In this document: positions 1 to 56,143 of the stretch, piece by piece
How positions within the stretch are numbered: position 1 is the first letter of the stretch
Layout of the letters: the number at the start of each line of letters is the position of its first letter
DNA from: Cyanophora paradoxa CCMP329
Lineage: Eukaryota; Plantae; Glaucophyta
Reading direction: 5' to 3'
DNA: 64,000 nt
Assembly (NCBI GenBank): GCA_004431415.1
Contig: QPMI01000306.1
Span: 4,203-68,202, forward strand
Notes under the pieces: generated by a model
The model's input: only the letters and a program-made list of their open reading frames with translations
Told to the model about the DNA's origin: nothing
Databases searched by the model: none
Made by a program: the position numbers and the translations under genes

Positions 1-2859
1 TCTTCTATTTTCTGGTAGATCGGAAACCTCGGGCCTTCCACTGAGTGACTGGTGGCAGGTGGGTCATCTGCCTAAGGCTAGAGCCTTGTGCATATTCCCC
101 CAGAGAGATGTGAAGTGCATCTTCCTTCTATTTTGTGGCAGATCGGAACCTGGGGCGTTGGACTGAGTGACTTGCTTTGGGAGGGTCATCTGCCTAAGGC
201 TAGCGCCTTGTGCATATTCCCCTGCGAGAGTTGGGGTGCATCTTTCTTCTATTTTCTGGCAGATTGGAAACCTGGGCCTTCGACTGAGTGACTTGCTGGT
301 GGGTGGGTCATCTGCCTAAGGCTAGCGCCTTGTGCATATTCTCCCAGAGAGATTTGAAGTGCATCCTTCTTCTATTTTCTGGTAGATCGGGAACCTGGGG
401 CCTTCCACTGAGTGACTGGTGGCAGGTGGGTCATCTGCCTAAGGCTAGAGCCTTGTGCATATTCCCCCAGAGAGAAGTGAAGTGCATCTTTCTTCTATTT
501 TGTGGCAGATCGGAGCCTGGGGCGTTGCATTGAGTGACTTGCTGGTGGGTGGGTCATCTGCCTAAGGCTAGCGCCTTGTGCATATTCCCCCTGCGAGATT
601 TGGGGTGCATCTTTCTAGCGCCTTGTGCATATTCCCCCAGAGAGAAGTGAAGTGCATCTTTCTTCTATTTTGTGGAAGATCGGAGCCTGGGGCGTTGCAT
701 TGAGTGACTTGCTTTTGGGAGGGTCATCTGCCTAAGGCTAGCGCCTTGTGCATATTCCCCCAGAGAGATTTGAAGTGCATCCTTCTTCTATTTTCTGGTA
801 GATCGGAAACCTCGGGCCTTCCACTGAGTGACTGGTGGCAGGTGGGTCATCTGCCTTAGGCTAGAGCCTTGTGCATATTCCCCCAGAGAGATGTGAAGTG
901 CATCTTTCTTCTATTTTGTGGCAGATCGGAACCTGGGGCGTTGGACTGAGTGACTTGCTTTTGGGAGGGTCATCTGCCTAAGTCTAGCGCCTTGTGCATA
1001 TTCCCCCAGAGAGATTTGAAGTGCATCCTTCTTCTATTTTCTGGTAGATCGGAAACCTCGGGCCTTCCACTGAGTGACTGGTGGCAGGTGGGTCATCTGC
1101 CTAAGGCTAGAGCCTTGTGCATATTCCCCCAGAGATGTGAAGTGCATCTTTCTTCTATTTTGTGGCAGATCGGAACCTGGGGCGTTGGACTGAGTGACTT
1201 GCTTTTGGGAGGGTCATCTGCCTAAGGCTAGCGCCTTGTGCATATTCCCCCAGAGAGATTTGGGGTGCATCTTTCTTCTATTTTGTGGCAGATCGGAAAC
1301 CTGGGGCCTTCGACTGAGTGACTTGCTGGTGGGTGGGTCATCTGCCTAAGGCTAGCGCCTTGTGCATATTCCCCCAGAGAGATTTGAAGTGCATCCTTCT
1401 TCTATTTTCTGGCAGATCGGAAACCTGGGGCCTTCCACTGAGTGACTGGTGGCAGGTGGGTCATCTGCCTAAGGCTAGAGCCTTGTGCATATTCCCCCAG
1501 AGAGATTAGAAGTGCATCTTTCTTCTATTTTGTGGCAGATCGGAGCCTGGGGTGTTGCATTGAGTGACTTGCTTTTGGGAGGGTCATCTGCCTAAGGCTA
1601 GCGCCTTGTGCATATCCCCCCAGAGAGATTTGGGGTGCATCTTTTTCTTTTTTGTCACAAATCAGAAACCTGGGGCCTTCGACTGAGTGACTTGCTGGTG
1701 GGTGGGTCATCTGCCTAAGGCTAGCGCCTTCTACATATCCCCCCAGAGAGGTTTGGGGTGAATCTTTCTTCTATTTTGTGGCAGATCGGAAACCTGGGGA
1801 GTTGGACTGAGTGACTTGCTGGTGGGTGGGTCCTCTGCCTAAGGCTAGCGCCTTGTGCATATTCCCCCAGAGAGAAGTGAAGTGCATCTTTCTTCTATTT
1901 TGCGGCGGATCAGAAACCTCGGGCCTTCCACTGAGTGACTTGGTGGTGGGTGGGTCATCTGCCTAAGGCTAGCGCCTTGTGCATATTCCCCCAGAGAGAT
2001 TAGAAGTGCATCTTCCTTCTATTTTGTGGCAGATCGGAAACCTGGGGCGTTGGACTGAGTGACTTGTTTTTGCGAGGGTCATCTGCCTAAGGCTAGCGCC
2101 TTGTGCATATTCCCCCAGAGAGATTTGGGGTGAATCTTTTTCTTTTTTGCCACAGATCGGAAACCTGGGGAGTTGGACTGAGTGACTTGCTGCTGGGTGG
2201 GTCATCTGCCTAAGGCTAGCACCTTGTACATATCCCCCTGGAGAGATTTGGGGTGCATCTTTCTTCTATTTTGCGGCAGATCGGAAACCTGGGGCGTTGG
2301 ACTGAGTGACTTGCTGGTGGGTGGGTCATCTGCCTAAGGCTAGCGCCTTGTGGATATTTTCCCAGAGAGATTTGGGGTGCATCTTTCTTCTATTTTGTGG
2401 CAGATTGGAAACCTGGGGCGTTGGACTGAGTGACTTGGTGGTGGGTGGGTCATCTGCCTAAGGCTAGCGCCTTGTGGATATTTTTTCAGAGAGATTTGGG
2501 GTGCATCTTTCTTCTATTTTGTGGCAGATCGGAAACCTGGGGCCTTGGAGGGAGTGACTTGGTGGCGGGTGGGTCATCTGCCTAAGGCTAGCGCCTTGTG
2601 CATATTCCCCCAGAGAGATTTGGGGTGCATCTTTCTTCTTTTTGTCACAGATCAGAAACCTGGGGCCTTCGACTGAGTGACTTGCTGGTGGGTGGGTCCT
2701 CTGCGCTAGCCTTAGGAAGATGAACCCACCCACCACTAGGGCCTTCGAATGAGTGACTTGCTGGTGGGTGGGTCATCTCCCTAAGGCTAGCGCCTTGTGC
2801 ATATTCCCCCAGAGAGATTTGGGGTGCATCTATCTTCTTTTTTCTGGCAGATTGGAACC
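1..2859 (+). repeat. 124-bp satellite array (Sat124)
   Basis: Tandem unit CCTAAGGCTAGCGCCTTGTGCATATTCCCCCAGAGAGATTTGGGGTGCATCTTTCTTCTATTTTGTGGCAGATCGGAAACCTGGGGCCTTCGACTGAGTGACTTGCTGGTGGGTGGGTCATCTG; CCTAAGG recurs at 1221 and 1345 (124 bp). Contains a short inverted patch at ~2704-2734. Confidence 0.98.
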
Positions 2860-3558: not shown

Positions 3559-5647
3559 ATTACTCTCAATGAGTTCTTGAAGCGGCAGTCGTTGTCGGTC
3601 GCTCGCGCTTTCCCTTTCCCTTCCTTGGATGCTTTTCCATCTTCTTCTATTTCTTCTCCTTCTTCTGGTCCCGATGTTACCCTTGTCAAAGAGAATGATC
3701 CCATTATCCATGAGGTTGCTTCAGTGGAAATTCGCCCAGACATTCATCCTGGCTATGGTCAAGCGCATTCGCGTGGAATTAATAACAAATTGAATGATTC
3801 AAAAAGTGCTAGTAGAGTAGTGGTAGTTAGTGGAAATCGTGAAAATTAAGGATGTTTTGGATGACTCGAAAAGTGCTAGTAGAGTAGTGGTAGTTAGTGG
3901 AAATCGTGGAAAATTGGAACAGAAGTCCCTTTCGAATTTCTTTTCTGATGAGCTGCGATGGAAACGAGATGCCCCTGCTAGAAAGCATTTTATGTCATCT
4001 ACAAATAATTCGAAGCCGGTTTCCCTGAAGTTGTCTTTTGATGATAATGGCCGAGCCTCAATTGAAATTTGTTCTCTGGACTCCCAGAGCCCTCCTGCTG
4101 AGCCTGCATTCGCAGGGCCGCGTCGCTTCATGACCTCAGCTCTGGGGAGGTCAACTCTGGACGTTGTCATTCAGGGAAAACATCACAAATTCCTTCTTGA
4201 CAGCGGGGCAGATGTCTCTTTCATTCTTTCTTCTACTATCTCTTCTCTTGGACTTCAAAATAAGGTGTTTAGAACTATTCACACTCCTTCTGTCAAGCTC
4301 CCGAATTCAGCATTGGTGGCTGTTCCTGGTGAGGTTCATGTGGCTGCTACTATTGGGCCCCTCACCCGGAGTTTTCCCTTTCTTGTGGTTGATTTCCCGG
4401 GATACGCATTCGATGGCATCTTAGGCCAAGATTTCTTTTCTGATAATGGAGTCACCTATTGCAATAAGGACGCTGATAACCGATTTGTGGTCTTCGCCAA
4501 GCACCCAGACAAGCCAGTTAAGTGTGGAATTCTCTCTTTCTTACCTGGCACCTCTACGCAGCCGAGTTCTCTGTCGCCGGAGACACCGAAATCTGACCCC
4601 TTGGACGACTCCAGCATTCGCAGAGTGTCCAAGGAGCATGGTCATATTCTGGAGGTTGCAAGGGAGGTTAAAATTGAACCTGGTGTGCAACGGAAAGTTG
4701 AACTGCAAATCGGAGGCAACCGCTATTTGCCGGATTGTGAAGGTTTTCTTGTCAACTTCTACAAATGGGACGACAATCAGGAGGTCCGTGTGGCAAACGG
4801 GCTTGCTGCGTGTCGTGGAGGCAAAGTGTATGCTTTAGTTCCGAATTTGAGCAATCGTTTTTCTGAGAAACCAGTTGTTTTGAAGAAGGGCCGTGCAATC
4901 GCACGATTTGTCCCTGAGAAAAATCTCGAAGCTGAAGTTTTTGACTTGGCTCTTAATTTGAGTTATGATCAAGATGGGAACGGCAAGTATGTAAAGGTCG
5001 ACCGGCCTGGCGAGGTTCCGTCGCCTTTGTGCACAACATACTCTGCTCAGTACACTTGCGCAGACTCATCGCAAGTCAACTCTGCCGATGCCAAAAATGT
5101 TGACAATTCTTTCGTGGAAATCGCGCCTCCAAAACGTTCACCGGAGTCCGAGAATGCTTCGAAAAATGTTTTTGATAGTGTAGGTCTTCCCGAGTGTTCA
5201 TACCCATATGAGGAGAAGTTAGGTAGTTTTTCGCATTTGAACGCTGTTCCGATCAAGCTTCGACTGTTATTTTCGATGAGTTGCGGCAACGGTATGGCGC
5301 CGACATCGTTGATGCTCTCCGAGCCGTCGACATTGGCAGTCGGGATGATACGCCTGCGGAGCGTGCTGTCATGGCTGACTTCCTCGCACAGAACTGGGAC
5401 TTGGCCAAGGCTGCACTACCTCCGTACGACCCGAGTGCGCCTCTGGGGACGCCCGCCCCATCGCGGAGCCCCCTCGGAGGCACTCGCAGACTGAACGAGA
5501 ATTAATTATCGATGAGACCAAAAAGTTGCTTTCTCGCAATCTTATTCGTCCCTCTCGCTCACCTTGGGCCGCTCCTGTGGTCCTTGTGCGCAAGAAGGAT
5601 GGATCTCTTCGATTTTGCATTGATTATCGCAAATTGAATTCAGTTAC
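3559..5647 (+). pseudogene. Family B pol fragment: aspartic protease, dUTPase-like domain, start of RT
   Basis: ORF 3830-5494 has FLLDSGAD. Downstream frames give [35 protein letters not shown]. Frameshifted, with a local duplication at ~3795-3910. Confidence 0.92.
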
Positions 5648-5650
5648 TGC

Positions 5651-6058
5651 CATCTGTGTAATGCTAGCACCTTGTGCATATTCCCCCAGAGAGATTTGGG
5701 GTGCATCTTTCTTCTATTTTGTGGCGGATAAGAAACCTGGGGCCTTCCACTGAGTGACTTGCTGGAGGGTGGGTTCATCTGCCTGAGGCTAGCGCCTTGT
5801 GCATATTCCCCCAGAGAGATTTGGGGTGCATCTTTCTTCTATTTTGTGGCAGATTGGAAAACTGGGGCCTTTGACTGAGTGACCTGCTGGTGGGTGGGTC
5901 ATCTGCGTGATGCTAGCACCTTTTGCATATTCCCCCAGAGAGATTTGGGGTGCATCTTTCTTCTATTTTGTGGCAGATCGGAAACCTGGGGGATTTGACT
6001 GAGTGACTTGCTGGTGGGTGGGTCATCTGCCTGAGGCTAGCACCTTGTGCATATTCCC
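5651..6058 (+). repeat. Sat124 short array (~3 units)
   Basis: Same unit as 1-2859. Confidence 0.95.
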
Positions 6059-6312
6059 TGGCTTGCCAGCGAAGGGGACCTGGCCGGTTTCCGGCGGCTT
6101 GCCAGCCAAAGAGCCAGCCAGCCGTACCAGCCGTACCTCTCAGAGGCTGCCGCAGTGCCAGGTACGTACTACGTACTACTTGCAGCAGTCTACTGTGACA
6201 GTAGTACTGTCTACGCAGACTCTACGGCGCTCTACATATACTCTATGCGTATACGTATACGTACGGCTGCGCGGGAGTTTGAATTCGAATTCAAACTTCG
6301 AAGGCAGATCTA

Positions 6313-8140: not shown

Positions 8141-8751
8141 GCTTAGCCACGTAGCTTAGTGTAGCTTTGCTTTCTCGCCTCAGAGGCCCGCGAGCGCTCT
8201 ATTTAGCCTATATTTTGTTTCAAAAGCATGTAAATGACTTATATTCTCTGCCCTGAGCGCTGCATGCAACTGGGCGCGCGAGGATCACTCAGGAGACATC
8301 TGGGGCTCCAATTTCCAGTAGTTCTTGAATACGGACCCAGGCTTTGATCGGCGGCCTTCGGTACCGCCACCATCGTCTTCAGCACCCTCGAAAACCCCCG
8401 GGGACGTGAAATCGCCACTTCTGAGTGAGTTGATGCTTCAATCAGGCATCATGAGCAGGTCGGGGTGGCATTTTGGAACTTGAAAACTGAGAAGTCCCCG
8501 AGAGGGTCCTACGAGTAAGATTCAAGAGACCGGTCCGGCTCAAAAACACTTCGGATCACCCTGTATCTTGGTGCAGTGACATAACTACATGTGATAATGA
8601 TTCTGGCTCAAAGAGTGATCTAGTGACTACTCTCAACAGGTTCGAGCACGGGCAGCATCCGCTGATGCACACATAGTGGAATTGACACACACACTGCACA
8701 CGCCTAATGATTGACTAACTCTCCCCGGGGGGGGGAAGTACAACGCGAAGG

Positions 8752-11700
8752 CATCAAGAATGGTAATTAAATACATGTTGCCACGCCGTGAGCGTTTGAA
8801 AGGGCCAACAATGTCAATCTCAACGTGTTGCATTGGACCCTCTGCGAATATCTTGGAGGTGGGAACTTCAGTCTTGACTCGAACTGCCTTGATCCTCTTG
8901 CAATCCTCACAATTCGAGACGAAGTTACCAATGTCAGCATACATTCCAGTCCAATGATAGCGTTGCCTAAGGTTCTCGCGCATTTTCCAAGCTCCAGGAT
9001 GACCCAGGGACTTGTGTGTAGACGAGAGCACAAGTTGTGTCAAATGAGAGGGAATGCAAACACGAATGTAGTCATCCCCGGCTTTCTGATAGCACAAGAC
9101 TCCATCATTAACAGTGAACTTTCCAGATTTCGCAAGTCGTTCTGCCTGGACATCAGGCCCTTGTGGCTCGACAGTCACATCAGCTTCTAGATATAGAAGT
9201 AAAGACTCCAGCAACGGATCCTTCAGCTGCTCATCACGAATTCTAGAAGGAGACAAAGTCAGAGACATTTCAACAGAGTTCAACAGCACAGAATGAGAAA
9301 CAGTCTCAATTGCAGCGACTGCCGCATGAATCATCCTAGATAGGGCATCAGCATCACGGTTCAATTTCCCTGGTTTATGCTGAACTTCAAAATCATATTC
9401 CTGCATCCCAAGTATCCATCGAGTGATACGCGCATTAGGAAGAGACTTTGCCGATCTCAAATACTGCAGTGCAGAATGATCCGATTTGATAATGAATTTT
9501 CGTCCACGCAAATACTGAGAAAACTTCTTTGTTACTGCCCACCAAATCGCATATAGTTCCTGCTCAGTGGTTGTCCATAATTGTTGTTCGGATGACAGGG
9601 GCTTTGCAGCATATTCGATGACATACTCCATTCCAGACTGCTTAAAACTGATTTGTTTTGTCCACTTCTTTTCTGCGGACGAGAATTTATGTGAAGCAAA
9701 TTGAATCGGCCTCTCTACACCATCATCATCAAGTTGAGACAACACAGCACCAACTCCAGTCTTGGATGCATCAGTCTTTAAGATAAAGGGCTTACTGAAA
9801 TCAGCAAATCGAAGAATAGGATATGTCATCAGGTACTCCTTAGCCTTTTCAAATGCAATCTGTTGATTATCACCCCAAGAAAATGGGACTTTGCTTGATG
9901 TCAAGTCCGACAAAGGAGCAGTTATAACAGCAAATAGCTCAACAAAAACACGATAATATGACACCATCCCCAAAAATGTTCTCACCTCGGAAACATTCTT
10001 AGGCACTGGGTAATTCAAGATAGCTTCAATCTTGGCCTTGGAAGGACGAAGACCTTCCCTGGTGACCTCAAATCCAAGGTATTCAGCCTTCCATTGGAAG
10101 AACAAAGATTTCTTTGGCTTGAAGAAAAGGAATGCCTTTTTCATGGCATCAAACGTCCATTGCAGATCCTTGAGATGCTGTTCAAACGACTTGCTGAAAA
10201 CACAAACATCGTCCAAATACATTAGCACAAAGATGAAAGCATAAGTGCCAAGCACACTGTTCATGAGCATTTGGAACGTGGCAGGGGCCGTTTTCAGCCC
10301 TTGTGGCATAACATTCCACTCAAACAGTCCAATAGGAGTACGGAAGGCAGTTTTGGGTTTATCCTCCTCTGCCATCTCAACATTCCAGTATCCATCAGGG
10401 CAATCCATAGGAGAAATGTAAAGGGAATTTCCCATTGCTTCGAGGGCATCATCAATTCTGGGAAGTGGGTACGCGTCATCTATTGTAACAGCATTCAGTT
10501 TCCTATAGTCAATGCAGAAGCGAAGAGTTCCATCCTTCTTCCTCACGAGCACCACTGGAGCCGCTCAAGGTGACCGAGAAGGCCGGATGAAATTGCGTTC
10601 CAACAACTTCCTGGTCTCATTAATGATCAAGTCGTTCTCATGTTGGGAGTGTCGCCGTGGGGGCTCAGCAATAGGCTTGGCATCTCCAGTATTGATATTA
10701 TGCTTAATAGGAGGGTGAGGCTCAAGAGGACTGTAATTAGGAATGCTAGGTTTAGCAGCAGAAAGGTTTCCAAGCATAAAATCATGCATAGCAGCATATT
10801 TCTCAGGCTCTTCATTCTCATCTCCAATCTTTTTAATTTCTCGCAACAATGAGGCAACTTCAGGGCCGTATCGCTGTTCAACCTCTTGATAAATAGTGTC
10901 ATGAATTTGCGAAATGGGGACGCCGTGAAACCGAGAATATTTAGAAGCATCGTAGGAGAAGGGGTTCTCAACCGAGTATGAGGGTGGTGACTCAAAACTT
11001 GGGGCCGTCTGCACCTGGACGGAGTCCGCACAACTGTAAGGCTCACCTTTGCTTTTAGAATCAGAAGCATCTGGTATAAAAGATCCATTTCCGTATTGAT
11101 CGTAGCCCAAGACAACTCCGCAGTCGTACACTTCTGGGAACAGTTGCTGCGTTTTCCCACCGACAATGCGCGGGATGAAACGAGCAATCTTCGTTCCTCT
11201 GCGCAGCACGACTGGAGGCGAATCGAAGCGATTGCTGAGATTCACCACCTGCGTATACAGCCGTCCGCCGCGGCACACGACCAAGCTGTTGACAACCCGT
11301 ATTTCGGGACTCGTAGAAGAATGACAATAATTCTCAACGTAGCCTTCGCCATCTGCGACAAATCGAAGCGCACGTAGCACGACTTTCCTCTGTTCACCAG
11401 CAGCAACTTCAACATCATCGTCCAGAACAAGCACATGTCCATGCGGTTCCAAGGAAACCTCGCAATTGCTAGATTCCTGACGAGGAACACATTCTTGTGC
11501 CTTTTCTGTCGATGCACTGTTGTCAAAGAGATTCAACTTCTTCAGATGAATCGGCTCTTCTGGAAAAGCAGAGAGGATAAGCTTCCGGTTGTCGTCATCC
11601 TTACAATCATAAGTTGCTCCATGGGTGCTGATGAAATCCTGCCCAAGAATACCATCAAAACAGTATCCAGGGAAGTCGACCACCAGCAACGGAACGCGTC

Positions 11701-12556
11701 CTTCAAAAGGACCAATTCTTGCTGTAACATGAAGTTCACCAGGCTGGTACATACGCTGATCAGGAAGTTTAATCTGTGGTGTAAATGTCCACTTCCTGAC
11801 TTTGTCTTGTAGGCCCAACTTGCTGACAGCAGAGGATACGATGATGGACAGGTCCGCTCCGCTATCAAGTAGGAACTTCAAAGGATACCCATTGATCAAC
11901 ACATCAACCACAGACCGACCAGGTGCAAGCGGAGCAAATCGCCGACCCACGACTGCAGGCTGCACACTTGGATCAGTTGAGGGAGACTTACCATTCACCA
12001 ACTGCATTTGACCATCCACGACACAAACTGCTAAACTGTCCTGTTCTAACTTCTGGAAGGGACCACTGAGAGTATAGTGCCTTTTTGGCAGAGGATGCAA
12101 GCTCAACTGAGGCTGCTTCGTAGCAAAGAGGTCTCTTTCTTCCAGGTGGCCCTGTGTTGAAGATACTTGAACCACACGAGCAGGCATGTCGTTTGGCTTG
12201 TCGGATCCCTGACATTGCTTGAGATCTGTACTCGCCTTTGACTCACCAGGAAGTTCATGTATCCGAGAGGAATGGTCATGCAGTGCACCCGGGCCCCGGG
12301 TTTGAGTAACAACAAAATCGCTTGACAAATTTGGAGAAGTAACAGAAACTGAAGGCGGGAAAACACTGCTGCCAGGATCAAGAGCATCTGCACTGCGGAC
12401 AGCTCCTGCTCCCGACAGGGTGAGAACCAGTCGCTCAAACTCATAGAATGTGATTAATCTAGGACTCTTGCTGCCAACTGCAGCAAGACTTGCTGGGGGA
12501 AGACTAGAAACCGCCCCAGCCCGGTGGCCGAAGCCGGGCTGGGTAGTTAGTTTCCC
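8752..12556 (-). pseudogene. Family A pol (PR, dUTPase-like, RT, RNase H, N-terminal integrase)
   Basis: Motifs FLLDSGAD; YLDD; TDAS..TEQELYA..SDH..ADALSR; HHCC zinc finger; EIDIVGP. ORFs 10565-12328 and 8633-10555 are in the same frame, split by one TGG>TGA stop in RSP(W)AAP. Truncated at YLITILDAF. Confidence 0.95.
12515..12556 (-). promoter_or_regulatory. -1 programmed ribosomal frameshift signal (family A)
   Basis: Heptamer G GGA AAC (12556-12550), 6-nt spacer containing the gag TAA, and a 10-bp stem CCCAGCCCGG/CCGGGCTGGG. The -1 frame is open for 76 codons straight into the protease ORF at 12328. Confidence 0.9.
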
Positions 12557-13905: not shown

Positions 13906-13923
13906 GCCCCACGGTGGGCGCCA
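13906..13923 (-). promoter_or_regulatory. Primer binding site, tRNA-Lys (family A)
   Basis: Minus strand TGGCGCCCACCGTGGGGC, 4 nt from the LTR end; matches the known tRNA-Lys(CTT)-type 3' end GCCCCACGGTGGGCGCCA. Confidence 0.88.
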
Positions 13924-15579
13924 AAAATGATCTAGTGACTACTCTCAACAGGTTCGAGCACGGGCAGCATCCGCTGATGCACACATAGTGGAATTGACAC
14001 ACACACTGCACACGCCTAATGATTGACTAACTCTCCCCGGGGGGGGGAAGTACAACGCGAAGGGCAGGCTGGGGTCACGACAAGAGCGCCTGCTGGGGCC
14101 AGCCGGTCGCCCAGGAAGTCACTGGCTCACTGGAACTCATGAGCAATCTCTGCTGGGGAAGCGCGCGCCAGGGCCGCGTTGCATCCACGCACGCTCTATT
14201 CATGCGCTCACCGAATCGCGCTACGGCGGCCCTGCGAGCCCTCGCGGTGCGGAGCCTTTGAAGCGAGATCAAATCGTCCAGCTGCAGCTGCTGGTGTATA
14301 CACAGCAGGAGCAGGCGATATCCACAAGGAAGCGAGCGCCAGGGCCGCGATGCATCCACGCAAGCTCTTTCAAGGCTAGCATCGATTCACGCTCGCGGCG
14401 GCCCGTCGCGCCCTCGCAGTTCGCAGTGGAATCGAATCGCCCACGTGCACTGGGCCAGGTGCCCCTGCTGGAGGAGGTGCGGCTGGCGGCGGGGGCGCGT
14501 GCCGCTGCCCGCACGCGCGCTGTGCGCGAGCTCTAGATGTGTATCGTGGCCCCAGACATCTCAACCCGCACCGCCCCGCCGTCGCAGCCATGCCATCAAG
14601 AACCGCATGACATGCTTGATTGCACACGAGAGCGCATCTGCCTGTGGCGAGGCGGGCCACGAAGCGGAGGCTTGGCCGGACCTCCGCAATGCCGGCGAGC
14701 GGTGCGCGGTCTTGGAGGGGGCGAAAGATGCCATGGCGACTCGAGGCCTGCGAGAGGCGCGCGGGGCTGGATCCAGTTAGGCCGGGGCGCGCGAGCGTGG
14801 CGGAGCAGGGCCTCGACACGCACCGTTCCGAGATGCTCATGTTAGGCATGAGCCTCCTCCGCTGCGGCGTGGTTGGGCTGCGCTCCTCCGCTGCGGCGTG
14901 GCTGCGCTCGGATCAAGTCTCGCGCGGATCAAGTCCTCGCTGCGCGCCGGCTCGTCAGCAGCGCAAACGGGCTTAAGCTAGCACTATGAGCGGTAGAGAA
15001 GCGGTCTGGGGTCGCTCGCTTCATTCCGGAGTGGAGTGGAGACGACGGCACCCATCAAATCGCCGCCCATAGAATACTAGCAGTGTCCGGAGGGCGAAAG
15101 TTGCGCAAACGCTCCGCATTGATAGGCGCTAGAGCGACAACACGACGGTTCCTTGTTGCGAGCGCTGACGAACCCTCGCTGGTGGCTGCAGCAGTCTGCT
15201 TCACTGCTGCGTCCTTCTTGCCGCCGGCTTTGGGGACCCACTTCCACTTCCCGTTGATCTTCACGTGCCCGCCGCCCGCCGGAGCGCTGGCTGCCTCGCC
15301 GGCGGTCGCCGAACGTTTAGCCTGGTTCGAATCCGCCAAGTTCGGTTCTGGTTCCTCCCCCCCCCAGATAATGCCCGGAAAAGGCTGATATTTCGATAAT
15401 TTCAAAAAAAGCGAGCGTGCACAGGGGGTGTCGGGAGGCTCTCCCGACATGTTTGGCATGGTTTTTAAAAAGTTTCAAAAGTCGGCCGTTTTTGCCCCCC
15501 TAGTGGCCTCACACGGTCGTTTACGCGCCATCTCTCCGGCAGCCACGCCATCTTTGAGAGCACAACAGCTGAGCAGGCG

Positions 15580-18823: not shown

Positions 18824-20038
18824 TCTGTGGGAATATGCCCAAGGCGCTAGCCTTCCCCCCACCCACCCACAAGTCACTAAATCAAAAGCCCCAGGTTTCC
18901 AATCTGCCAGAAAAAAGAAGAAAGATGCACCCCAAATCTCTCTGGGGGAATATGCTCAAGGTGCTAGCCTTACGAAGATGACCCACCCACCAGCAAGTCA
19001 CTCAGTCGAAGGCCCCAGGTTCAGGATCTGTGACAAAATCAAAGAGAGATGCACCCCAAATCTCTCTGGGGGAATATGCACAAGGTGCTAGCCTTATGCA
19101 GATGACCCACCTAAAAGCAAGTCACTCAGTCCAAGGCCCCTGGTTCAGGATCTGTGACAAAATCAAAGAAAGATGCACCCCAAATCTCTCTGGGGGAATA
19201 TGCACAAGGTGCTAGCCTTAGGCAGATGACCCACCCACCCACAGGTCACTCAGTCAAAGGCCCCAGGTTTCCAATCTGCCAGAAAATAGAAGAAAGATGC
19301 ACTTAAAATCTCTCTGGGGGAATATGCACAAGGCGCTAGCCTTAGGCAGATGACCCACCCACCAGCAAGTCACTAAATCAAAAGCCCCAGGTTTCCAATC
19401 TGCCAGAAAAAAGAAGAAAGATGCACCCCAAATCTCTCTGGGGGAATATGCACAAGGCGCTAGCCTTAGGCAGATGACCCACCCACCAGCAAGTCACTAA
19501 ATCAAAAGCCCCAGGTTTCCAATCTGCCAGAAAAAAGAAGAAAGATGCACCCCAAATCTCTCTGGGGGAATATGCACAAGGCGCTAGCCTTAGGCAGATG
19601 ACCCACCCACCCGCAAGTCACTAAATCAAAAGCCCCAGGTTTCCAATCTGCCAGAAAAAAGAAGAAAGATGCACCCCAAATCTCTCTGGGGGAATATGCA
19701 CAAGGCGCTAGCCTTAGGCAGATGACCCACCCACCTGCAAGTCACTAAATCAAAAGCCCCAGGTTTCCAATCTGCCAGAAAAAAGAAGAAAGATGCACCC
19801 CAAATCTCTCTGGGGGAATATGCACAAGGTGCTAGCCTTAGGAAGATGACCCACCCACCAGCAAGACACTCAGTCGAAGGCCCCAGGTTCAGGATCTGTG
19901 ACAAAATCAAAGAGAGATGCACCCCAAATCTCTCTGGGGGAATATGCACAAGGTGCTAGATGACCCACCTTAAAGCAAGTCACTCAGTCGAAGGCCCCAG
20001 GATTCCAATCTGCCAGAAAAAAGAAGAAACATGCACCC
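18821..20038 (-). repeat. Sat124 array, inverted
   Basis: Reverse complement of the Sat124 unit. Confidence 0.97.
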
Positions 20039-20215
20039 ACACCGGCTGAGTGTAGAGTTAAGGCCGGATGACGTAGTTGTAGCAATCTACGAGCGGGAAG
20101 TTCTCCTTGATAAAGACCTGGTGGTGAAGGCCGAGGTTTGAGAGCTCTTTCTCGAGATGCGCAAGGAGCTCTGGAGGCCGTGGGACGCAGTTCTGAAGGC
20201 GAGAGGCGGGGATGT

Positions 20216-21308
20216 CATCTTTCTTTGATTTGCGGGTGGGTGGGTCATCTGCCTAAGGCTAGCACCTTGTGCATATTCCCCCAGAGAGATTTGGGGTAAA
20301 TCTTTCTTCTTTTTTCTGGCAGATTGGAAACCTGGGGCCTTTGACTGAGTGACTTGTGGGTGGGTGGATCATCTGCCTAAGGCTAGCGCCTTGTGCATAT
20401 TCGCCAGAGAGATTTGAAGTGCATCTTTCTTCTATTTTGTGGCAGATCTTAAACCTGGGGCCTTCGACTGAGTAACTTGCTGGTGGGTGGGTTCATCTTC
20501 TGAAGGCTAGCGCCTTGGGCATATTCCCCCAGAGAGATTTGGGGTGCATGTTTCTTCTTTTTTCTGGCAGATTGGAAACCTGGGGCCTTTGACTGAGTGA
20601 CTTGTGGGTGGGTGGGTCATCTTCCTAAGGCTAGCGCCTTGGGCATATTCCCCCAGAGAGATTTGAAGTGCATCTTTCTTCTTTTTTGTGGCAGATTGGA
20701 AACCTGGGGCCTTCGACTGAGTGACTTGCTGGTTGGTGGGTCATCTGCCTAAGGCTAGCGCCTTGTGCATATTCCCCCAGAGAGATTTGGGGTGCATCTT
20801 TCTTCTTTTTTCTGGCAGATTGGAAACCTGGGGCCTTTGACTGAGTGACCTGCGGGTGGGTGGGTCATCTTCCTAAGGCTAGCGCCTTGTGCATATTCCC
20901 CCAGAGAGATTTGGGGTGCATCTTTCTTCTTTTTTCTGGCAGATTGGAAACCTGGGGCCTTCAACTGAGTGACTTGCTGGTTGGTGGGTTTATCTGCCTA
21001 AGGCTAGCGCCTTGTGCATATTCCCCCAGAGAGATTTGGGGTGCATCTTTCTTCTTTTTTCTGGCAGATTGGAAACCTGGGGCTTTTGATTAAGTGACTT
21101 GTGGGTGGGTGGGTCATCTTCCTAAGGCTAGCGCCTTGTGCATATTCCCCCAGAGAGATTTGGGGTGCATCTTTCTTCTATTTTCTGGCAGATCGGAAAC
21201 CTGGGGCCTTTGACTGAGTGACTTGCTGGTGGGTGGGTCATCTTCCTAAGGCTAGCGCCTTGTGCATATTCCCCCAGAGAGATTTGGGGTGCATCTTTTT
21301 TCTTTTTT
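20216..21308 (+). repeat. Sat124 array
   Basis: Same unit. Confidence 0.97.
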
Positions 21309-22532: not shown

Positions 22533-22534
22533 TA

Positions 22535-24058: not shown

Positions 24059-26071
24059 TGTCCCGTAGTACACTATGGGTTCACACGCTGATGTACCAGG
24101 ACAAGTTCCTGGACACCACACTGTATTTCCACCCAACACACCAACTGAGGGGCAAGCCCCTACACATCAGGCTAATCTCGGGTACATCAGGGGGTACTAT
24201 GACACACTGACTTAGGCGAACTACGCTTCAGCTCAACTCGCTCTGTAGTAAGAAAAGGCGACGTCCTCGCTCGCCAATAAGTAAAGAAAGAATCTGATCA
24301 GTCCAAGGCGCCATGCGGGAAGCATGAACCATAATGCGAGATTTCAATTTGGGCGCATCGCGAGCCTTAGGCCCAGCATACTCCACAAGAAAAGTAACAC
24401 CTTTTCCATGAGAAACTTCCTTCAAAATAATCCAAGGCCCAGTGTAGCGAGGGGACAACTTGTCAGAGCGACGAGTCGATGGGATCCGAACTTTCACGAA
24501 TTCTCCAGGGAGGTACAACTGCTTAAGATTCGTTTGAGTAGCCAAATAGTCATTTTTAACTCCTTGGATGTCCGAATAAATCCGTGAAAATCTGCGAGCC
24601 AACTGCTGCGGGTATGAACCAGCATCAGTAGGATCCAGAACAAGTTCAGGGGTCACCAACAAATCCGTCGGCAAAACACAAGGCCGTCCATAAACCATTT
24701 CGAAAGGAGAATTACCAGTCGAAGGGTTTTTATAGTTGCGCACAGCGAGAAGTGCGAAAGGTAAATGTTTGTCCCAAGTCTTGGGATTGTCCTCAATGTA
24801 AAAACGAAGCCGAGTGACCAAAATGTCGTTGAATTTCTCGACTGCACCCTGAGACTGCGGGTGATAGGCGGAAGACATAATAGGCTTTATTTTAAAGAGC
24901 CGCTCCAACTCGGCAAGTAAGAAATTGCTAAATTCACCGCCTTGATCAGACGAAATCTTTACCGGTACTCCGTGCAACGGGATCCAGTGATCAAATAACG
25001 CTCGAATAACAGAATGCGCAGATTTGGTCCGAGCGGGAACCGCATGACTCCAACGAGTGAAAACATCGGTAATCGTAATCAAATATTCGTTTCCAGCTGA
25101 AGTTCTAGGAAGCGGACCAACGATATCAATTTCAATATGTTGCATAGGTCCGTCGGAATGGATTTGAAATTGCGGAACATCTTTCGTTTGCTTCGATACC
25201 TTGATGCGCTGACAATCGGCGCACCGAGAAACCAAATCAACTACGTCGGCGAACATGTTCCGCCAATAATAACGCCGCTTAATGTGATCGAACATTTTTC
25301 CAATCCCAGGGTGTCCAAGAGAACGATGAACTGTACTAAGAACTGTTTCGCGCAAATGCTCCGGTACGCAAATACGCGTAAGTGCACCCACTGCACGCTG
25401 ATGAACCAATACGCCATCGCGAAGAGCAAACTTATTTGTTTTCAAGAGGCGCTCGGCCTCCTTGTTGGGTCCAAGGGGCTCGACAGTAATGTCGGCCTCC
25501 AAATATTTGATCATGTCCGATAAAATAACATCTTTTAATTGCTCAAGTCTTATCTGAGCCGGTGATAAACTCAATTGAATTTCCACTGCATCCAGAAAAG
25601 CGGAAAAGATGGGCGAAGTCACCTCCATCGCCTCTAAAGCATTTACCGCCGTCCGCACAAGTCTGGAGAGCGCATCGGCATCGGCATTCGACTTGCCGGG
25701 CTTGTACTGAATTTCAAAATTGAACGGTTGCATATCCAAAACCCAGCGAGTGATCCGAGCACTCGGCAAATTCTTTGCCGCCTTGAAGTACTGGAGAGCA
25801 GAGTGGTCCGATTTAATAATAAATTTCTGTCCACGCAAATAATGAGAAAACTTTTTAGTCACTGCCCACCAAATCGCATACAACTCCTGTTCAGTGACCG
25901 TCCACTTCTGCTGATCCTCAGTGAGAGGTTCAGCCGCATACTCAATAACAACTTCCTTATTCCATTTCTTCTCCGCTGATGTAAATTTGTGAGAAGCAAA
26001 TTGCACAAACTTTTCATTTCCAGATGAGTCCACCTGAGAGAGAACTGCCCCTACTCCAACTTTTGAGGCGT
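24059..26071 (-). mobile_element. Ty3/Gypsy family C 3' half: RNase H + intact integrase + putative 3' LTR (24059-24235)
   Basis: ORF 24228-26033 has RH motifs, HHCC, D-D-E (IEIDIVGP, ISSDQG, GAVEKFN) and YTGPW. Putative LTR TGAGCTGAAGCGTAGTTC...CTACGGGACA (177 bp); its start resembles family B LTR starts but the interior differs. Confidence 0.92.
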
Positions 26072-37260: not shown

Positions 37261-37544
37261 GCCTGCGAGAGTGCTCGTCAGAAAGGTAAACCTCAACCGA
37301 GCTATGTGGAGTTTGCTGAAGAGGCGCAAAAGTTGGCATCGGAAGCTAATGTTGCTGTTGAGGAGGCGAATCTTCAAGTTTGGAAAGAGCTTGATTTGCC
37401 TGGTGCTCTTCCTGCTGACATCATGTCCAAGGCCCGACTCATTCATTATTTGACTGATGAGTGGACCAAGTACTTGGAGAAGAACTCGCAGTTTTCGGTT
37501 CTCCCTGGTTCAACATTTTCAACTACGGAGCGTAGTTCCTTCGT
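37261..37544 (+). mobile_element. Family D gag fragment
   Basis: Near-identical to 41137-41419 (ACESARQKGKPQPSYVEFAEEA...). Confidence 0.92.
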
Positions 37545-40946: not shown

Positions 40947-43900
40947 GTGGGGTATGCTTGGCCCATCATAAAACAGAAGATGGTTTCGATTTTCGTTGGA
41001 CACACTGAGATTCAGAATGCTTTGTTTGCTGCAAATGATTGGAACGCTTTTGAGACCACCTTTCTTCAGCACTTCTGCCATGAGAGCCATCGTATGGCTT
41101 CACTTCGTAAATTCTATTCTTTCACCTACAAAATTGCCTGCGAGAGTGCTCGTCAGAAAGGTAAACCTCAGCCGAGCTATGTGGAGTTTGCTGAAGAAGC
41201 GCATAAATTGGCATCGGAAGCTAATGTTGCTGTTGAGGAGGCGAATCTTCAAGTTTGGAAAGAGCTTGATTTGCCTGGTGCTCTTCCTGCTGACATCAAG
41301 TCCAAGGCCCGACTCATTCATTATTTGACTGATGAGTGGACCAAGTACTTGGAGAAGAACTCGCAGTTTTCGGTTCTACCTGGCTCAACATTTTCAATTA
41401 CGGAGCGTAGTTCCTTCGTCACACGCTCTGAGTTGGAAGTTCTTCGCTCTGAGTTGCGCTCTGAACTGGATTCTCGTGTTCGGTCCCTCGAAACTGAACT
41501 CAAACATTTCCGCTTTGAAAACCAGAATGCGTTCTCTGACCTTTCGTCACAGCTGGATCGGTTTATGAATGCTACTTCATCTCGCAATAGCGCTCATTAC
41601 GGAAACTATGGTTCTTCGAATTCATACAATTACAATTTCTCTTCTCGTGGTGGTCGCGGTCGTGGTGCATTCCGCGGTGGTTTCAATAACCGCAACTCGT
41701 TTGATCGCCGCAATGACAATCCGCAACCGCGTGCTCGTTCGCAGGATCGCTCTGACTCGCAAGTTCGGAGCAATTCCGTCCCTCGCTCGGGGGGGCGCTA
41801 ACCCAGCCAGGTTTTTCAGCCCGCCTGGCTGGGGCAAATCAGCCAGCAACCCAACGGAGGGGTTTAATTTCGATTTCTCCGCTTATTTCATTCAATGAGT
41901 ATCTTCGACGTACGTCTGCTTTCTCTTCCCTTCCCAATTCTCCTCCACTTCCTTCTATTTCTTCTTTTCCTGTGTCCAATACCAGCAAATCTAAGAGTTC
42001 TGCTAATTTTGACAGTGGCAAGATTTGTTGTGCTCAAAATGTTCAAGGTCATTCGATCAGTGCTTCTACCCCAAGCTGTGATGCCTCTTCTCTGGAACAG
42101 AGGACCATGCTTGTTTCCAAGCAGAAGGGAGAATTCATTCGAGTGCCTCTCTCTCAGTGTACCAGCAAGGTTTCTTTGTCTCTTTCCGCTTTTCCCAGAA
42201 GGCATTATGGATCACTTGGTGGAATTTCGAAGAGCAAACAACCTCTTGAAATTGTTGGAAATAGCAGTAGCACTTCAAGCCCAAAAAGTCCCTCTGACAA
42301 CTCCCACTCTCCTAGAGAGAATTCTCCAGCAGGGAGACAGTTTGCTGTCTGATATTTCACTGGTCACAAGAAGACTGGTGCAGAAGTTGAAACTTCAAAA
42401 TCAGGTAATTAAGACCTCATTCACGCCTTGTGTTCGCCTGCCCAATTCACATCTTGTTAATGTACCTGGCGAGATTTTGATTAAAGGGTCAATCGGTCCT
42501 TTGACAGCATCTTTCCCATTTCTTGTTGTGGACTTTCCCAATTATCCATATGCCGGCATTCTTGGACAAGATTTCTTGTCTGAATTTGGAGTGACATATA
42601 AGAATGAACAGGTGAACAGGCGCTCCATCACATTCTCGAAGTTCCCAGATCAGCCAGTAGAGTGCAAGATTGCTTCTATTACTTTTGGATCAGATCAGCA
42701 GCATGGATCCTTGCCAGATTCTCCTCAACCACGCCCTGATGAATCATCTCACAATTCTGATGAGTGTTCTGAAGAATATGGTGTGATTATGGAGACTGCT
42801 GAGAAGGTCAAGCTTGATCCTGGAACTCAGAGGTTTGTTTGGATGCGAGCACCCAGCCGCTGCTATGTGCAGGATGGCGAAGGCTTTATTGATGACTTTA
42901 GAGAATGGAACGAGAATGAGTTTGTCCATGTGGCAGGTGGCCCAGCTCATTGTCGTGGAGGACGTATCAAGGTATTGCTTGTCAATCTTGATCCAAGGTC
43001 TGACAGGGGACCGGCAGTAATACCTGAAGGTACCCGGCTAGCCAGGTTTGTTCCGAGCAAGAGTAAAACATCAGTTGTCCACAACATGCCGGAAATCTGT
43101 GATGTCAACCTGGTGCTGAGTTATGACTCATCTGGGAAAGGAAGTTTTGTGCACACTTCTGAGTACAAGGGTCCTGATTCAGTAGATATCACTGCGTCCG
43201 AAGCTGTTCTCCAGTCTTCTTTTGATGATTCAAGTAAAAGAGTTTCAGATTCTGTTGTAAATAACTCGACTTCATTAGATAGCGATAAAAAGAGTTCTGT
43301 ATTTTCGCAAGCAAGTTCTGTACCAGTATCTTCGGTCGATGAAGTAATTCTGAAGGAGATTCGGGAGCGATTTGGTGATAATGTTGCAAGCCTCATCTCT
43401 CCATGCAGTGTTGGTTCAGCTGATGATAATCTTGATGAGAGGAAGCTTATGTGGGATTTCTTGGCGAGGAAGCATGAAGTATTTGCTGAGGGTCAATGGA
43501 AACATGATGAGTCCAGACCTGGTCCTCCTATTGAGCATAGCATTGACACTGGAGATGCAAAGCCGATTGCTGAACCTCCAAGACGTCTTTCTTTTGACCA
43601 ACGCCAAAAGATTGTTCAAGAGACCCAAAAGCTGATCAAAAGGAATTTAATTCGTCCTTCTAGAAGCCCTTGGGCCGCTCCAGTGGTCCTTGTGCGGAAG
43701 AAGGATGGTTCATATCGTTTCTGCATCGATTACAGAAGGCTCAACAGTGTTACCAAGGATGATGCATATCCCTTACCAAGAATTGATGATGCTCTTGAAG
43801 CTCTTTCTGGATCCATATATATTTCTGTTGCAGATTGTGATGATGGATATTGGAATGTCAAGATGAGTGAGAAGGATCGGCCGAAGACAGCTTTTAGGAC

Positions 43901-46471
43901 ACCAACTGTTTATATGAGTGGAATGTCATGCCGCAGGGCCTCAAAACGGCCCCTGCGACATTTCAGATGTTGATGAATGGAGTGTTAGGAGCGTACCTTT
44001 ACATCTTTATTCTTGTTTATCTTGATGATATATGTGTCTTTTCCAGGAGTCTGAAGGAGCATTTCGAACATCTTGAATGGGTTTTTGATCAGCTGATTGC
44101 TGCTCACCTGCGGTTAAAAGCACGCAAGTGTCGTTTCTTCAAGGCTGAAGCTGAGTACCTTGGATTTGTTGTTTGCCGAGAAGGAATCAAGCCGTGTGAC
44201 AGCAAAGTTCAGGCTGTGAAGAATTTCAAGACTCCAACATCTGTATCAGAAGTCAGGTCTTTCTTAGGTTTAGTGAATTACTACAGGGTCTTCATACCTT
44301 CATGTGCAATCATTGCTTCTCCATTGTATGATTTGTTGAAATCCAAGAATTTGTTTGTATGGGGAGAATCACAAGACTTTGCTTTCGGTAAGCTCAAGGA
44401 GTTATTGTGTTCCTCTCCTATTCTTGCATATCCAGATTTCAAGAAGTCTTTTATCCTCAAAACAGATGCTTCGAAAACTGGCATTGGTGCTGTGTTGTCG
44501 CAACTGGATGACAATGGTCAGGAGCGAGTCATTTCGTTTGCTTCCAAGACACTCACCCCAGCTGAGCGCAAGTGGAACAAGGAGGTTGTTATTGCATATG
44601 CTGCTGAACCGTTATCAGATGAGCAACAGAAGTGGACAGTTACTGAGCAGGAGTTATATGCTGTTTACTGGGCTGTGACTAAAAAGTTCTCACATTATCT
44701 GAAAGGTCCCAAGTTCTTCATCAAGTCGGATCACAGTGCTCTCCAGTATATGAAGTCGAATAAGGAGTTCCCAAATGCTCGGATCGCCCGCTGGATTCTT
44801 GGAATGCAGGAGTACAACTATGAAATTTCGCACAAGTCTGGTACCCTGAATGCTGATGCGATGCACTTTCGAGACTTGTGAAGCGAGTTGTTGCCAAGAT
44901 TGAAGAGTTGTCTCTCATTTCTCCTATCATTCCCATCCCTATTCTTGTGAATGCAGTTGAGCTTGATTTATCTCTTTCTGCTTGTGATATTAGAGCTGCT
45001 CAACTTGAGGATCCGTTGCTCAACACCATGATCAGGTATCTTGAAGATGATGTGCTTGTCCTTCCTGAGGGCGTGGACAAGTCAGTGGAGCGAACACTCA
45101 AGAGTGGGAAGTTCGTACTGAAATGTGATGTACTTTGTCGCCAACGAACTGGATCTGATTCTTTTCAAGTTGTTGTTCCGTACTGCATGACTCAACAGGT
45201 TCTTCGCGCTCTTCACGACAATTTCGGACATCCTGGAGTGACCAAGTTGATCGATCTTGTCTCATCTCGTTACTATTGGAAGAACTTGCGTCGCGATGTC
45301 TATGATTATGTTCGGAGCTGCCACAAGTGTCAGTTGATCAAACCGAAGCCAACCTCTTCGAATCTTCCGACTGTATCTGTGGTTGCTGATGCTCCGATGC
45401 AACACATTGAGATCGACATCGTGGGGCCGTTTCCCATATCGAGTCGTGGTAACAAGTACGTGGTGACAATTGTCGATGTTTTTACTCGATGGGGCACCGC
45501 AGTGCCTGCACGGTCCAAGTCGGCCACTGTCGCTGTTCGCGCACTTTTCGAACATTGGATCCCTGAACATGGAGTTCCTCGCAAAATCTCTTCTGATCGT
45601 GGCGGAGAATTCGATAATCTCATTCTGCAAGAGTTGGAACGGATCTTCGGAATAAAACATGTTTTCGCTGCTCCATATCATCCCCAATCGCAGGGTCTCG
45701 TGGAAAAGTTCAACGATGTTCTCGTCACTCGCCTTCGTTTCTATGCGGAACAGAACGAGAAGCAATGGGACTTGTTCATTCCTTTCGCCTTGTTTGCGAT
45801 TCGCAACTTCAAGAATCCTTCGACTGGATTCACACCTTTCGAGATGTTGTACGGTCGACAGTGTACGCTTCCTACTGATTTGTTGCTTGAACCTGATATC
45901 ACTGTCGGCAATTCTGCTTCTACTCACGCTGCTGAGCTTGGTCGTCGGTTCTCGCGTATCTACTCCGAGGCTAATTTGGTTCGGCAAGCTCGACAGGACG
46001 CACAAGGGCAAGCTGCCTCACCCTCGGGTGACCCGTTGTTCGTTCAAGGTGAACAGGTCTGTGTCAAGACCCCTTCGACTCGTTTGCGCAAGATGGACCC
46101 CAAGTTCACTGGTCCATGGGAGATCGTTGCTGATGCCTCTCGTGGACATGGTGTGTCCTATGTGGTTCGATTTGTTGGTGGTGACAACAAGCTTGGCTAT
46201 TCTACCGGTGACAAGGTTACGGTTCACGCTGATCGTCTCATCCCCTACGTTGAGCGTGATTGAGTTGGCCAGCGAGGACGTGGCCCTCTCAACTGCGGAG
46301 CGAAATGTTGTATCTCGAACCCAAACTCCCCCTCGTAGCATAGCCCTGTGCCCTATGTATGGTAGTCAGTTGGGGCTTGTACTGGCTTCTGTAATAAATA
46401 CACGAGACTCTTGCAGAATGACGGGTAAACATGTTCTCCCAAGTGTTCTTTGATCATTTCTTGCCGCAACC
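40947..46471 (+). mobile_element. Ty3/Gypsy family D, 5'-truncated, with putative 3' LTR ~46306-46471
   Basis: gag 40947-41801. pol in pieces (41972-42352, 41895-43973, 43928-44881, 44878-46263) with YLDD, RH motifs, HHCC, DDE and FTGPW. Protease DSG segment deleted near 42346. LTR TGTTG...GCAAC with AATAAA at ~46393. Confidence 0.95.
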
Positions 46472-56115: not shown

Positions 56116-56143
56116 CATACATCTTTCATCATCCATCTAGCCT

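What the first reader, a model, noticed from the sequence alone, without database searches (positions are those of the whole stretch)
9550..9710. Gypsy lineage with an internally duplicated (double-step) RNase H segment conserved in three divergent families
Established: Ty3/Gypsy RNase H has one [VI]x[FY]AS..L...ExxY segment directly before the catalytic TExELLA. Seen: all three copies here have that segment twice, in frame. A: PIQFASHKFSSAEKKW-TKQISFKQSGMEY-VIEYAAKPLSSEQQLW-TTTEQELYA. C (~25880-26005): VQFASHKFTSAEKKW-NKEV-VIEYAAEPLTEDQQKW-TVTEQELYA. D (~44527-44660): VISFASKTLTPAERKW-NKEV-VIAYAAEPLSDEQQKW-TVTEQELYA. All four catalytic acidic residues remain (TDAS, E, SDH, ADA). The two halves have diverged from each other but each is conserved across families. 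Inference: the duplication is old and under selection, either a new loop next to the active site or a hybrid left by fusion of two tandem RNase H domains.
Basis: partly seen in the sequence, partly recalled or inferred. Interest (0 to 1): 0.8.

Follow-up and report, generated by a model that had tools for sequence, protein, structure and literature searches.

The report
Duplicated strand unit in Gypsy RNase H
Three diverged Gypsy-type jumping genes in this algal satellite-rich region carry an old, selectively kept, in-frame repeat of one small piece (a strand plus a short helix) of their RNase H enzyme, and an unrelated Gypsy lineage from metagenomes has made the same kind of repeat independently; it is a real but modest structural variant of a well-known enzyme.

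Summary
Copies A (- strand), C (- strand) and D (+ strand) each carry the RNase H segment "turn + strand beta3 + short helix ending in W" twice, in frame. The extra piece is 20 aa in C and D and 29 aa in A.

- **It is a repeat.** A profile built from 45 relatives without the repeat hits each copy in two pieces, and both pieces cover profile positions 45-65.
- **It is rare.** About 340 other Ty3/Gypsy RNase H domains have a DAS-to-DH spacing of 66-68. The spacing here is 88 in D and 97 in A.
- **It is old and constrained.** The two units share only about 50% of their bases. Silent sites between A, C and D are saturated, while amino-acid change in both units is as low as in the rest of the domain.
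- **It is kept in other samples.** D-family contigs from other sequencing runs keep the repeat, and their four differences inside it are all silent.
- **It has arisen twice.** Seven metagenome proteins (P0201, P0232-P0237) have an equivalent repeat at the same site. The RT-RNase H tree and an AU test (p 0.005) place them apart from the window lineage.

AlphaFold2 puts the first unit in the sheet and leaves the second as a low-confidence loop before the catalytic helix. I found no sign of a second whole RNase H domain, so the "fused tandem domains" reading is not supported.

The scan had noted this same stretch twice, not on other DNA.

The parts
8633..10555 (-). Copy A, ORF with RT, RNase H and the integrase zinc finger; the integrase core is lost
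   Evidence: Pfam RVT_1, RT_RNaseH_2, RT_RNaseH (two stretches) and Integrase_H2C2; translation
9662..9709 (-). Copy A, unit 1 (PIQFASHKFSSAEKKW): strand beta3 plus short helix
   Evidence: the AF2 model of A has strand 57-66 and helix 69-72 here, pLDDT 86-91
9623..9661 (-). Copy A, 13-aa linker. Its KQSGMEY part matches the beta2-beta3 turn of the family profile, so A keeps a longer (29-aa) repeat unit
   Evidence: HMM piece 2 of A starts at profile position 42; codon alignment
9575..9622 (-). Copy A, unit 2 (VIEYAAKPLSSEQQLW), directly before the catalytic helix TTTEQELYA
   Evidence: low pLDDT of 43-50 in AF2
10565..12328 (-). Copy A, ORF with the aspartic protease
   Evidence: Pfam Asp_protease_2, RVP
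24228..26033 (-). Copy C, ORF with the C-part of RNase H plus a complete integrase. Upstream it is broken by stops, and the RT is replaced by the satellite at 26071-27227
   Evidence: translation; Pfam; tandem repeats
25962..26009 (-). Copy C, unit 1 (FVQFASHKFTSAEKKW)
25902..25949 (-). Copy C, unit 2 (VIEYAAEPLTEDQQKW), after linker NKEV at 25950-25961
41895..43973 (+). Copy D, ORF whose C-terminus carries the N-part of RT (Pfam RVT_1 is the only family hit; a protease was not confirmed by Pfam here)
   Evidence: translation; Pfam RVT_1
43928..44881 (+). Copy D, ORF with the RT C-part and RNase H
   Evidence: translation; phmmer to Ty3 4OL8 and 7Q5B
44528..44575 (+). Copy D, unit 1 (VISFASKTLTPAERKW). 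It keeps the nearly invariant Ser of beta3 and fits the family profile about 10 bits better than unit 2
   Evidence: AF2 strand 50-59 and helix 62-65
44576..44587 (+). Copy D, linker NKEV, a remnant of the beta2-beta3 turn
   Evidence: aligned to profile positions 45-48 'Gker'
44588..44635 (+). Copy D, unit 2 (VIAYAAEPLSDEQQKW), directly before the catalytic helix TVTEQELYA
   Evidence: AF2 coil with pLDDT 53-69, below 50 at residues 69-75
44878..46263 (+). Copy D, integrase ORF without a chromodomain. The frameshift at about 44858 is private to the window copy
   Evidence: Pfam Integrase_H2C2 and rve only; contigs in all four runs have one more C behind 44858

Best explanation
An ancestor of these three Ty3/Gypsy families underwent one short in-frame tandem duplication of 60-87 bases inside the RNase H domain. 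The duplicated piece is the beta2-beta3 turn, strand beta3 and the short helix that ends in a conserved aromatic residue (profile positions 45-65).

The enzyme kept its full catalytic set and went on transposing, and both units have since been held by purifying selection.

In this lineage the first unit most likely still serves as the edge strand beta3 of the sheet. The second unit then forms an extra surface segment of about 20 aa immediately before helix A, which carries the catalytic Glu. [quoted passage not shown] The extra piece is therefore placed where it could change how the hybrid is held or how two RT molecules pair, rather than the chemistry itself.

Shown: the duplication, its age, its constraint, and its independent recurrence elsewhere. 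Inferred: which unit is the strand, and any effect on substrate or dimer.
For: - Both units align to the same Ty3 residues and to the same 21 profile positions.
- Unit 1 and unit 2 are similar beyond shuffles, p <= 1e-4, yet only about 50% identical in bases, so the event is old.
- Between A, C and D, silent sites are saturated (pS 0.6-1.0). pN is 0.12-0.33 in unit 1 and 0.13-0.21 in unit 2, against 0.13-0.19 in the rest of the domain.
- D-family contigs from two DNA runs of other samples keep the repeat without indels. All 4 of their differences inside it are silent, as are 11 of the 13 listed differences across the RT-C/RNase H ORF.
- Unit 1 keeps the nearly invariant Ser and scores about 10 bits better on the family profile.
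- AF2 gives a good RNase H fold with unit 1 as beta3 plus short helix. The model matches CaMV RT (Z 17) and Ty3 RT (Z 14.3).
- The short helix between beta3 and helix 1 is a described element of CaMV RNase H and of retroviral connection domains (PMC11363490).
- About 340 relatives have single-unit spacing.
- A second lineage of 7 proteins has an equivalent repeat and is phylogenetically separate (AU p 0.005).
Against: - Only three copies, in one 64-kb window, could be compared. All three are damaged somewhere (A lacks the integrase core, C lacks the RT, D has frameshifts), so selection is inferred from past divergence, not from a proven active copy.
- AF2 confidence in the second unit is low (pLDDT 43-69). 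The input alignment, dominated by single-unit relatives, biases which unit is modelled as the strand.
- No experiment or solved structure bears on function.
- Of 48,953 hits in the exhaustive search only the best 150 were visible, so more carriers may exist.
- Sense transcription was not shown.
Confidence: 0.72

Rival explanations
1. The roles are reversed. The second unit, joined directly to helix A, is the working strand beta3 plus short helix. The first unit is an enlarged beta2-beta3 hairpin on the far edge of the sheet, as in the metagenome lineage.
For: - In the independent lineage the downstream unit is the canonical one by about 11 bits.
- Insertions in the beta2-beta3 hairpin recur in other Gypsy RNase H domains: P0186, P0217 and the L002-L011 family.
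- CaMV has strands there that are more than 10 residues longer (PMC11363490).
- Unit 2 keeps the majority Tyr of the strand.
Against: - Unit 1 keeps the nearly invariant Ser, which unit 2 has replaced by Ala in all three copies.
- Unit 1 fits the profile about 10 bits better in D.
- AF2 places unit 1 in the sheet at pLDDT about 90.
Confidence: 0.13
2. The repeat is a leftover of two complete tandem RNase H domains that were fused by a staggered internal deletion.
For: - A staggered deletion between two tandem domains would give the same final layout.
- Doubled RNase H domains are known in retroviruses and Tat-type elements (PMC4408406, listed; own knowledge).
Against: - It needs two events where one suffices.
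- Only profile positions 45-65 occur twice, and there is no second DAS, E, DH or D motif.
- No relative with two full domains of this type was seen. The multi-stretch hits looked at (P0083, P0156) are repeats or concatenations of whole elements, and the other multi-stretch hits were not examined individually.
- The same small unit was duplicated independently in another lineage, which points to a local tandem duplication.
Confidence: 0.05
3. The second unit is a functionless, merely tolerated insertion. It is fixed by chance in one ancestor, and its conservation is apparent only because few copies were compared.
For: - AF2 models it as a disordered loop.
- This edge of the fold tolerates insertions in other lineages.
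- The sample is three copies.
Against: - Silent sites are saturated while unit 2 changes no faster than the catalytic core.
- All four within-family differences in the repeat are silent.
- A further family variant seen as a loose contig end keeps the motif, with mostly silent changes (loose end at 44618).
- A neutral 20-aa loop would be expected to decay or be lost over this divergence.
Confidence: 0.08
4. The extra 60 bases are an intron removed from the sense mRNA, so the protein is ordinary.
For: In D and A, a GT..AG pair exactly 60 bases apart starts at unit 2.
Against: - Copy C has no such pair.
- The putative donor sites (GTTATT, GTCATC) do not look like the real donors seen here (GTAAGG, GTGAGT and similar).
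- The stretch is conserved as protein, in frame.
- No sense-strand joint was seen in the RNA-like runs.
- Removal would also take out part of the catalytic helix cap.
Confidence: 0.02

Closest known systems
Canonical Ty3/Gypsy RNase H (Pfam RT_RNaseH PF17917 / RT_RNaseH_2 PF17919; structures Ty3 RT 4OL8 and CaMV RT 8R0S)
   Same: Same fold, same catalytic residues, same position in pol between RT and integrase. Best structural matches are Z 17 (8R0S) and Z 14.3 (4OL8).
   Different: Strand beta3 with its following short helix occurs twice in tandem. DAS-to-DH spacing is 88-97 instead of 66-68.
Metagenome Gypsy lineage P0201, P0232-P0237 (JGI/ENA contigs; unnamed)
   Same: An extra unit of about 20 aa at the same site that resembles the beta3-plus-helix unit (in-register similarity p 5e-5 to 0.025), conserved across seven proteins; spacing 85-87.
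   Different: - Independent origin. It is nested among single-unit relatives and far from the window lineage (AU test p 0.005).
- There the downstream unit is the canonical one and the upstream unit has drifted further.
Dual RNase H of retroviruses (connection/tether plus new RNase H) and of Tat-type plant and oomycete Gypsy elements (PMC4408406, PMC10508981)
   Same: Redundancy inside the RNase H region of a Gypsy-like pol, followed by divergence of the two copies.
   Different: Those cases involve a whole additional domain of other origin, with decay of the native one. Here only 20-29 aa of the native domain are doubled and the domain stays catalytically complete.
Lengthened beta2-beta3 hairpins in related RNase H domains (CaMV strands beta12/beta13 more than 10 residues longer, PMC11363490; P0186, P0217 and the L002-L011 family seen here)
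   Same: Extra residues at the same edge of the sheet, showing that this edge tolerates additions.
   Different: Those are extensions or unrelated inserts within the hairpin. L002_meta gave no overlapping profile hit, and P0186 and P0217 gave a single full-length hit. Here the extra residues are a recognisable second copy of strand plus helix.

Membership tests
Ty3/Gypsy (Metaviridae) LTR retrotransposon | pol domain order protease - RT - RNase H - integrase | tested here: met
   Pfam hits in that order in A. C and D add RNase H - integrase and RT - RNase H - integrase respectively; the protease of C lies in a separate ORF at 28581-29765.
Ty3/Gypsy (Metaviridae) LTR retrotransposon | RT and RNase H closest to Ty3-type enzymes | tested here: met
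   phmmer E 6e-52 to Ty3 RT 4OL8; fold match Z 14.3-17
Ty3/Gypsy (Metaviridae) LTR retrotransposon | Flanking long terminal repeats | tested here: inconclusive
   A has 147-nt direct repeats at 8605-8751 and 13917-14063 (97%). No flanking pair was found for D or C, which are cut by satellite arrays.
Catalytically competent RNase H (DEDD) | Four acidic residues in place | tested here: met
   D31, E93 and D119 of the D numbering fall in invariant or nearly invariant columns. The last-helix D (ADA) is present in A, C and D. Activity itself was not tested.
Canonical single-unit Ty3-type RNase H architecture | One beta3-plus-helix segment; DAS-to-DH spacing 66-68 | tested here: not met
   Spacing 88 (D) and 97 (A); two overlapping profile hits
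Dual-RNase H elements (retroviral / Tat type) | A second complete RNase H domain next to the native one | tested here: not met
   Only one RNase H region in Pfam scans, and only profile positions 45-65 are repeated
Chromoviruses | Chromodomain at the integrase C-terminus | tested here: not met
   The integrase ORFs of C and D hit only Integrase_H2C2 and rve

The most novel reading that the evidence does not exclude
The doubled strand-plus-helix unit is an adaptive module that Gypsy elements have evolved at least twice independently. It adds a new structural element beside the substrate groove or at the RT dimer interface. This would change where RNase H cuts (for example polypurine-tract selection) or how the second RT subunit is recruited for cleavage.
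Probability: 0.2. Interest if true: 0.55.

Novelty: new variant of a known kind. Interest (0 to 1): 0.4.

Why it matters
RNase H of LTR retroelements is usually treated as a rigid, minimal fold. Its known large changes are whole-domain gains, as in retroviruses and Tat elements.

Here a sub-domain piece next to the catalytic helix was doubled, kept for a long time under selection, and doubled again independently in another lineage. That marks a specific, evolvable spot in the fold. It also offers a natural pair of constructs, with and without the unit, for asking how Ty3-type RTs position RNase H on the hybrid.

For annotation it matters too: such copies give split Pfam hits and could be mistaken for damaged domains.

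Tried and rejected
- **Word-index search with copy A's RNase H.** 82 hits at 43% identity or less, none with the repeat.
- **First metagenome scan, patterns taken from the repeat itself.** No relative found.
- **Second metagenome scan.** Only a distant family (L002-L011, 29-35% identity). It has an unrelated-looking 20-aa hairpin insert and no overlapping profile hit.
- **AU test on the 83-row tree.** It did not finish in two runs of 288 s, so I repeated it on 32 rows.
- **Two AlphaFold2 jobs.** Both gave only low confidence for the second unit, so the structure question stays open.
- **Host identity.** The NRS/ER-like ORF at 35572-36288 finds at best 58% identity, to protist and algal transcripts. 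I could not confirm the other notes' assignment to Cyanophora paradoxa.
- **Cluster look-ups.** No organism names for the nearest relatives.
- **Literature searches.** No description of such a repeat, but this library is incomplete, and Repbase, GyDB and REXdb could not be consulted.
- **Sense-intron reading.** Rejected.
- **Spliced antisense model.** It was joined only inside a script to measure open frames.

Full report
**What is there**

The window is largely a 124-bp satellite, with several Gypsy-type elements embedded in it. Three of them reach the RNase H domain.

- Copy A lies on the - strand. Its ORFs are 10565-12328 (protease) and 8633-10555 (RT, RNase H, integrase zinc finger).
- Copy C lies on the - strand. 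ORF 24228-26033 holds the C-part of RNase H plus the integrase.
- Copy D lies on the + strand, in ORFs 41895-43973, 43928-44881 and 44878-46263.

A fourth fragment at 3830-5494 stops after the protease.

**Check of the observation**

A motif scan of all six frames finds the segment [VI]x[FY]A[SA]..L...[EQ]..W twice, in frame, in each of A, C and D, and nowhere else. The extra length is 20 aa in C and D and 29 aa in A.

Three independent comparisons show that this is a real repeat of one part of the domain.

- phmmer against the solved Ty3 RT aligns Ty3 residues 382-397 to both units of D.
- Pfam RT_RNaseH hits copy A in two stretches.
- I built an HMM from 45 relatives that lack the repeat. 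It hits D, A and C in two pieces each, and both pieces cover profile positions 45-65. These positions are the beta2-beta3 turn, strand beta3 and the short helix ending in the conserved aromatic residue.

In copy A, the longer linker matches the turn of the profile. A therefore preserves a longer unit, of which C and D lack 9 aa.

In-register similarity of the two units is far above shuffles, p <= 1e-4. Their DNA is only about 50% identical, so the event is old.

**How unusual it is**

- Among the 82 best word-index hits, every protein where both motifs were found (62 of them) has a DAS-to-DH spacing of 66-70, nearly all 66-67.
- The exhaustive search found 48,953 hits. Its best 150 show the same spacing, with a few exceptions.
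- In the window the spacing is 88 (D) and 97 (A).

The nearest relatives anywhere are only about 50-54% identical. The lineage itself is therefore not represented in the protein collections.

**Selection**

Between A, C and D the silent sites are saturated (pS 0.6-1.0). Amino-acid-changing differences are as rare in unit 1 (pN 0.12-0.33) and unit 2 (0.13-0.21) as in the rest of the RNase H (0.13-0.19).

Contigs of the D family from two DNA runs of other samples span the repeat without any insertion or deletion. Of the 13 listed differences from the window copy in the RT-C/RNase H ORF, 11 are silent, including all four inside the repeat. In the integrase the count is 16 silent to 6 changing.

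The frameshift near 44858 is private to the window copy.

The repeat has thus been carried by elements that were transposing under protein-level selection.

**A second, independent case**

One of the 150 best hits, P0201, shows an equivalent doubled unit. A search around it found six more proteins from metagenome contigs, P0232-P0237, with spacing 85-87. In all seven, the extra segment resembles the canonical unit in register, p from 5e-5 to 0.025.

On an RT-RNase H tree of 83 sequences (repeat columns dropped), these seven form a clade with support 99. That clade is nested with single-unit relatives (99) inside a larger starred clade. A and D form their own clade (100) elsewhere.

Holding the two repeat-bearing groups together costs 56 log-likelihood units and is rejected, p-AU 0.005, on a 32-row set.

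In the metagenome lineage the downstream unit is the canonical one. In the window lineage it is the upstream one, by about 10 bits each way.

Other lineages carry unrelated insertions in the same hairpin. CaMV has longer strands there (PMC11363490). This edge of the fold is therefore permissive.

**Structure and likely working**

AlphaFold2 with a 51-row alignment gives a good RNase H fold. The best matches are CaMV RT (Z 17) and Ty3 RT (Z 14.3).

In the model, unit 1 forms strand beta3 plus a four-residue helix. Unit 2 is an irregular stretch of low confidence (pLDDT 43-69) leading into the catalytic helix. Because the alignment is dominated by single-unit relatives, this assignment is suggestive only.

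Strand beta3 is the edge strand of the sheet. [quoted passage not shown]

In Ty3 RT, the RNase H of a second subunit does the cutting and must move to do so (PMC11363490).

My best reading is therefore that the extra unit sits where it can influence substrate grip or subunit pairing, not catalysis. This step is inference.

**Rivals**

- *Fusion of two whole RNase H domains.* It is not needed and leaves no trace.
- *Sense intron.* It is excluded by protein-level conservation, by the lack of a shared GT..AG pair, and by the absence of sense joints.
- *Purely neutral loop.* It is hard to reconcile with saturated silent sites.
- *Reversed roles of the two units.* This remains possible.

**Context and limits**

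Other notes of this scan call the genome Cyanophora paradoxa or a similar alga. I could not confirm or refute that.

Only one window of the genome was available, and all three copies are damaged somewhere. Only the top 150 of the exhaustive hits were visible, and GyDB, REXdb and Repbase could not be consulted. Literature searches found no description of such a repeat.

**Verdict**

This is a real, old, selectively maintained sub-domain duplication in a Gypsy RNase H, with convergent recurrence in a second lineage. It is a new variant of a known enzyme architecture. It is of moderate interest to retroelement and RNase H specialists.

Noticed in passing
window 43720-45118 (copy D pol, - strand): Only the two runs guessed to be RNA show eight or more joints with ends CT..AC, which is GT..AG on the minus strand. 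They skip 44-59 bases and have good donor sites (GTAAGG, GTGAGT and similar). Transcripts antisense to the D-family pol thus appear to be spliced at many tiny introns. The joined antisense model has no open frame longer than 92 aa, so it looks non-coding.
   Followed up: partly
window 1-2704, 5523-6071, 18858-24059, 26071-27227, 48422-64000: A 124/125-bp satellite fills much of the window. The Gypsy copies are embedded in it or cut by it; the RT of copy C is replaced by an array. Other notes of the scan describe the same satellite-Gypsy association elsewhere in the genome.
   Followed up: no
window 44858: Contigs in all four sequencing runs carry one more C behind this base. The frameshift between the RNase H and integrase ORFs of D is therefore private to the window copy, and other D-family copies read through.
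   Followed up: partly
window 8605-8751 and 13917-14063: 147-nt direct repeats (97% identical) flank copy A. The downstream one abuts the integrase zinc-finger region, so A has lost its integrase core, probably by deletion up to the LTR.
   Followed up: no
L002-L011 (JGI metagenome contigs): A distant Gypsy family has the same helix motif TTTEQELYA and a total DAS-to-DH length like the window copies. Its extra 20 or so residues lie inside the beta2-beta3 hairpin and are not recognisably a repeat.
   Followed up: partly
window 35572-36288 (+): An ORF with epimerase/RmlD-type domains (NRS/ER-like). Its best relatives are protist and algal transcripts at about 58% identity, with no near-identical protein in the collection.
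   Followed up: partly
window 28914-29219: An exact-length tandem duplication of 153 bases (98% identical) inside the protease ORF of copy C, in frame as 51 codons.
   Followed up: no
window 37261-37544 and 41136-41419: A 284-nt direct repeat (97%). The second copy lies in the ORF upstream of D's pol (40947-41801, no Pfam hit; possibly gag), so a fragment of another D-like element sits 3.9 kb upstream.
   Followed up: no
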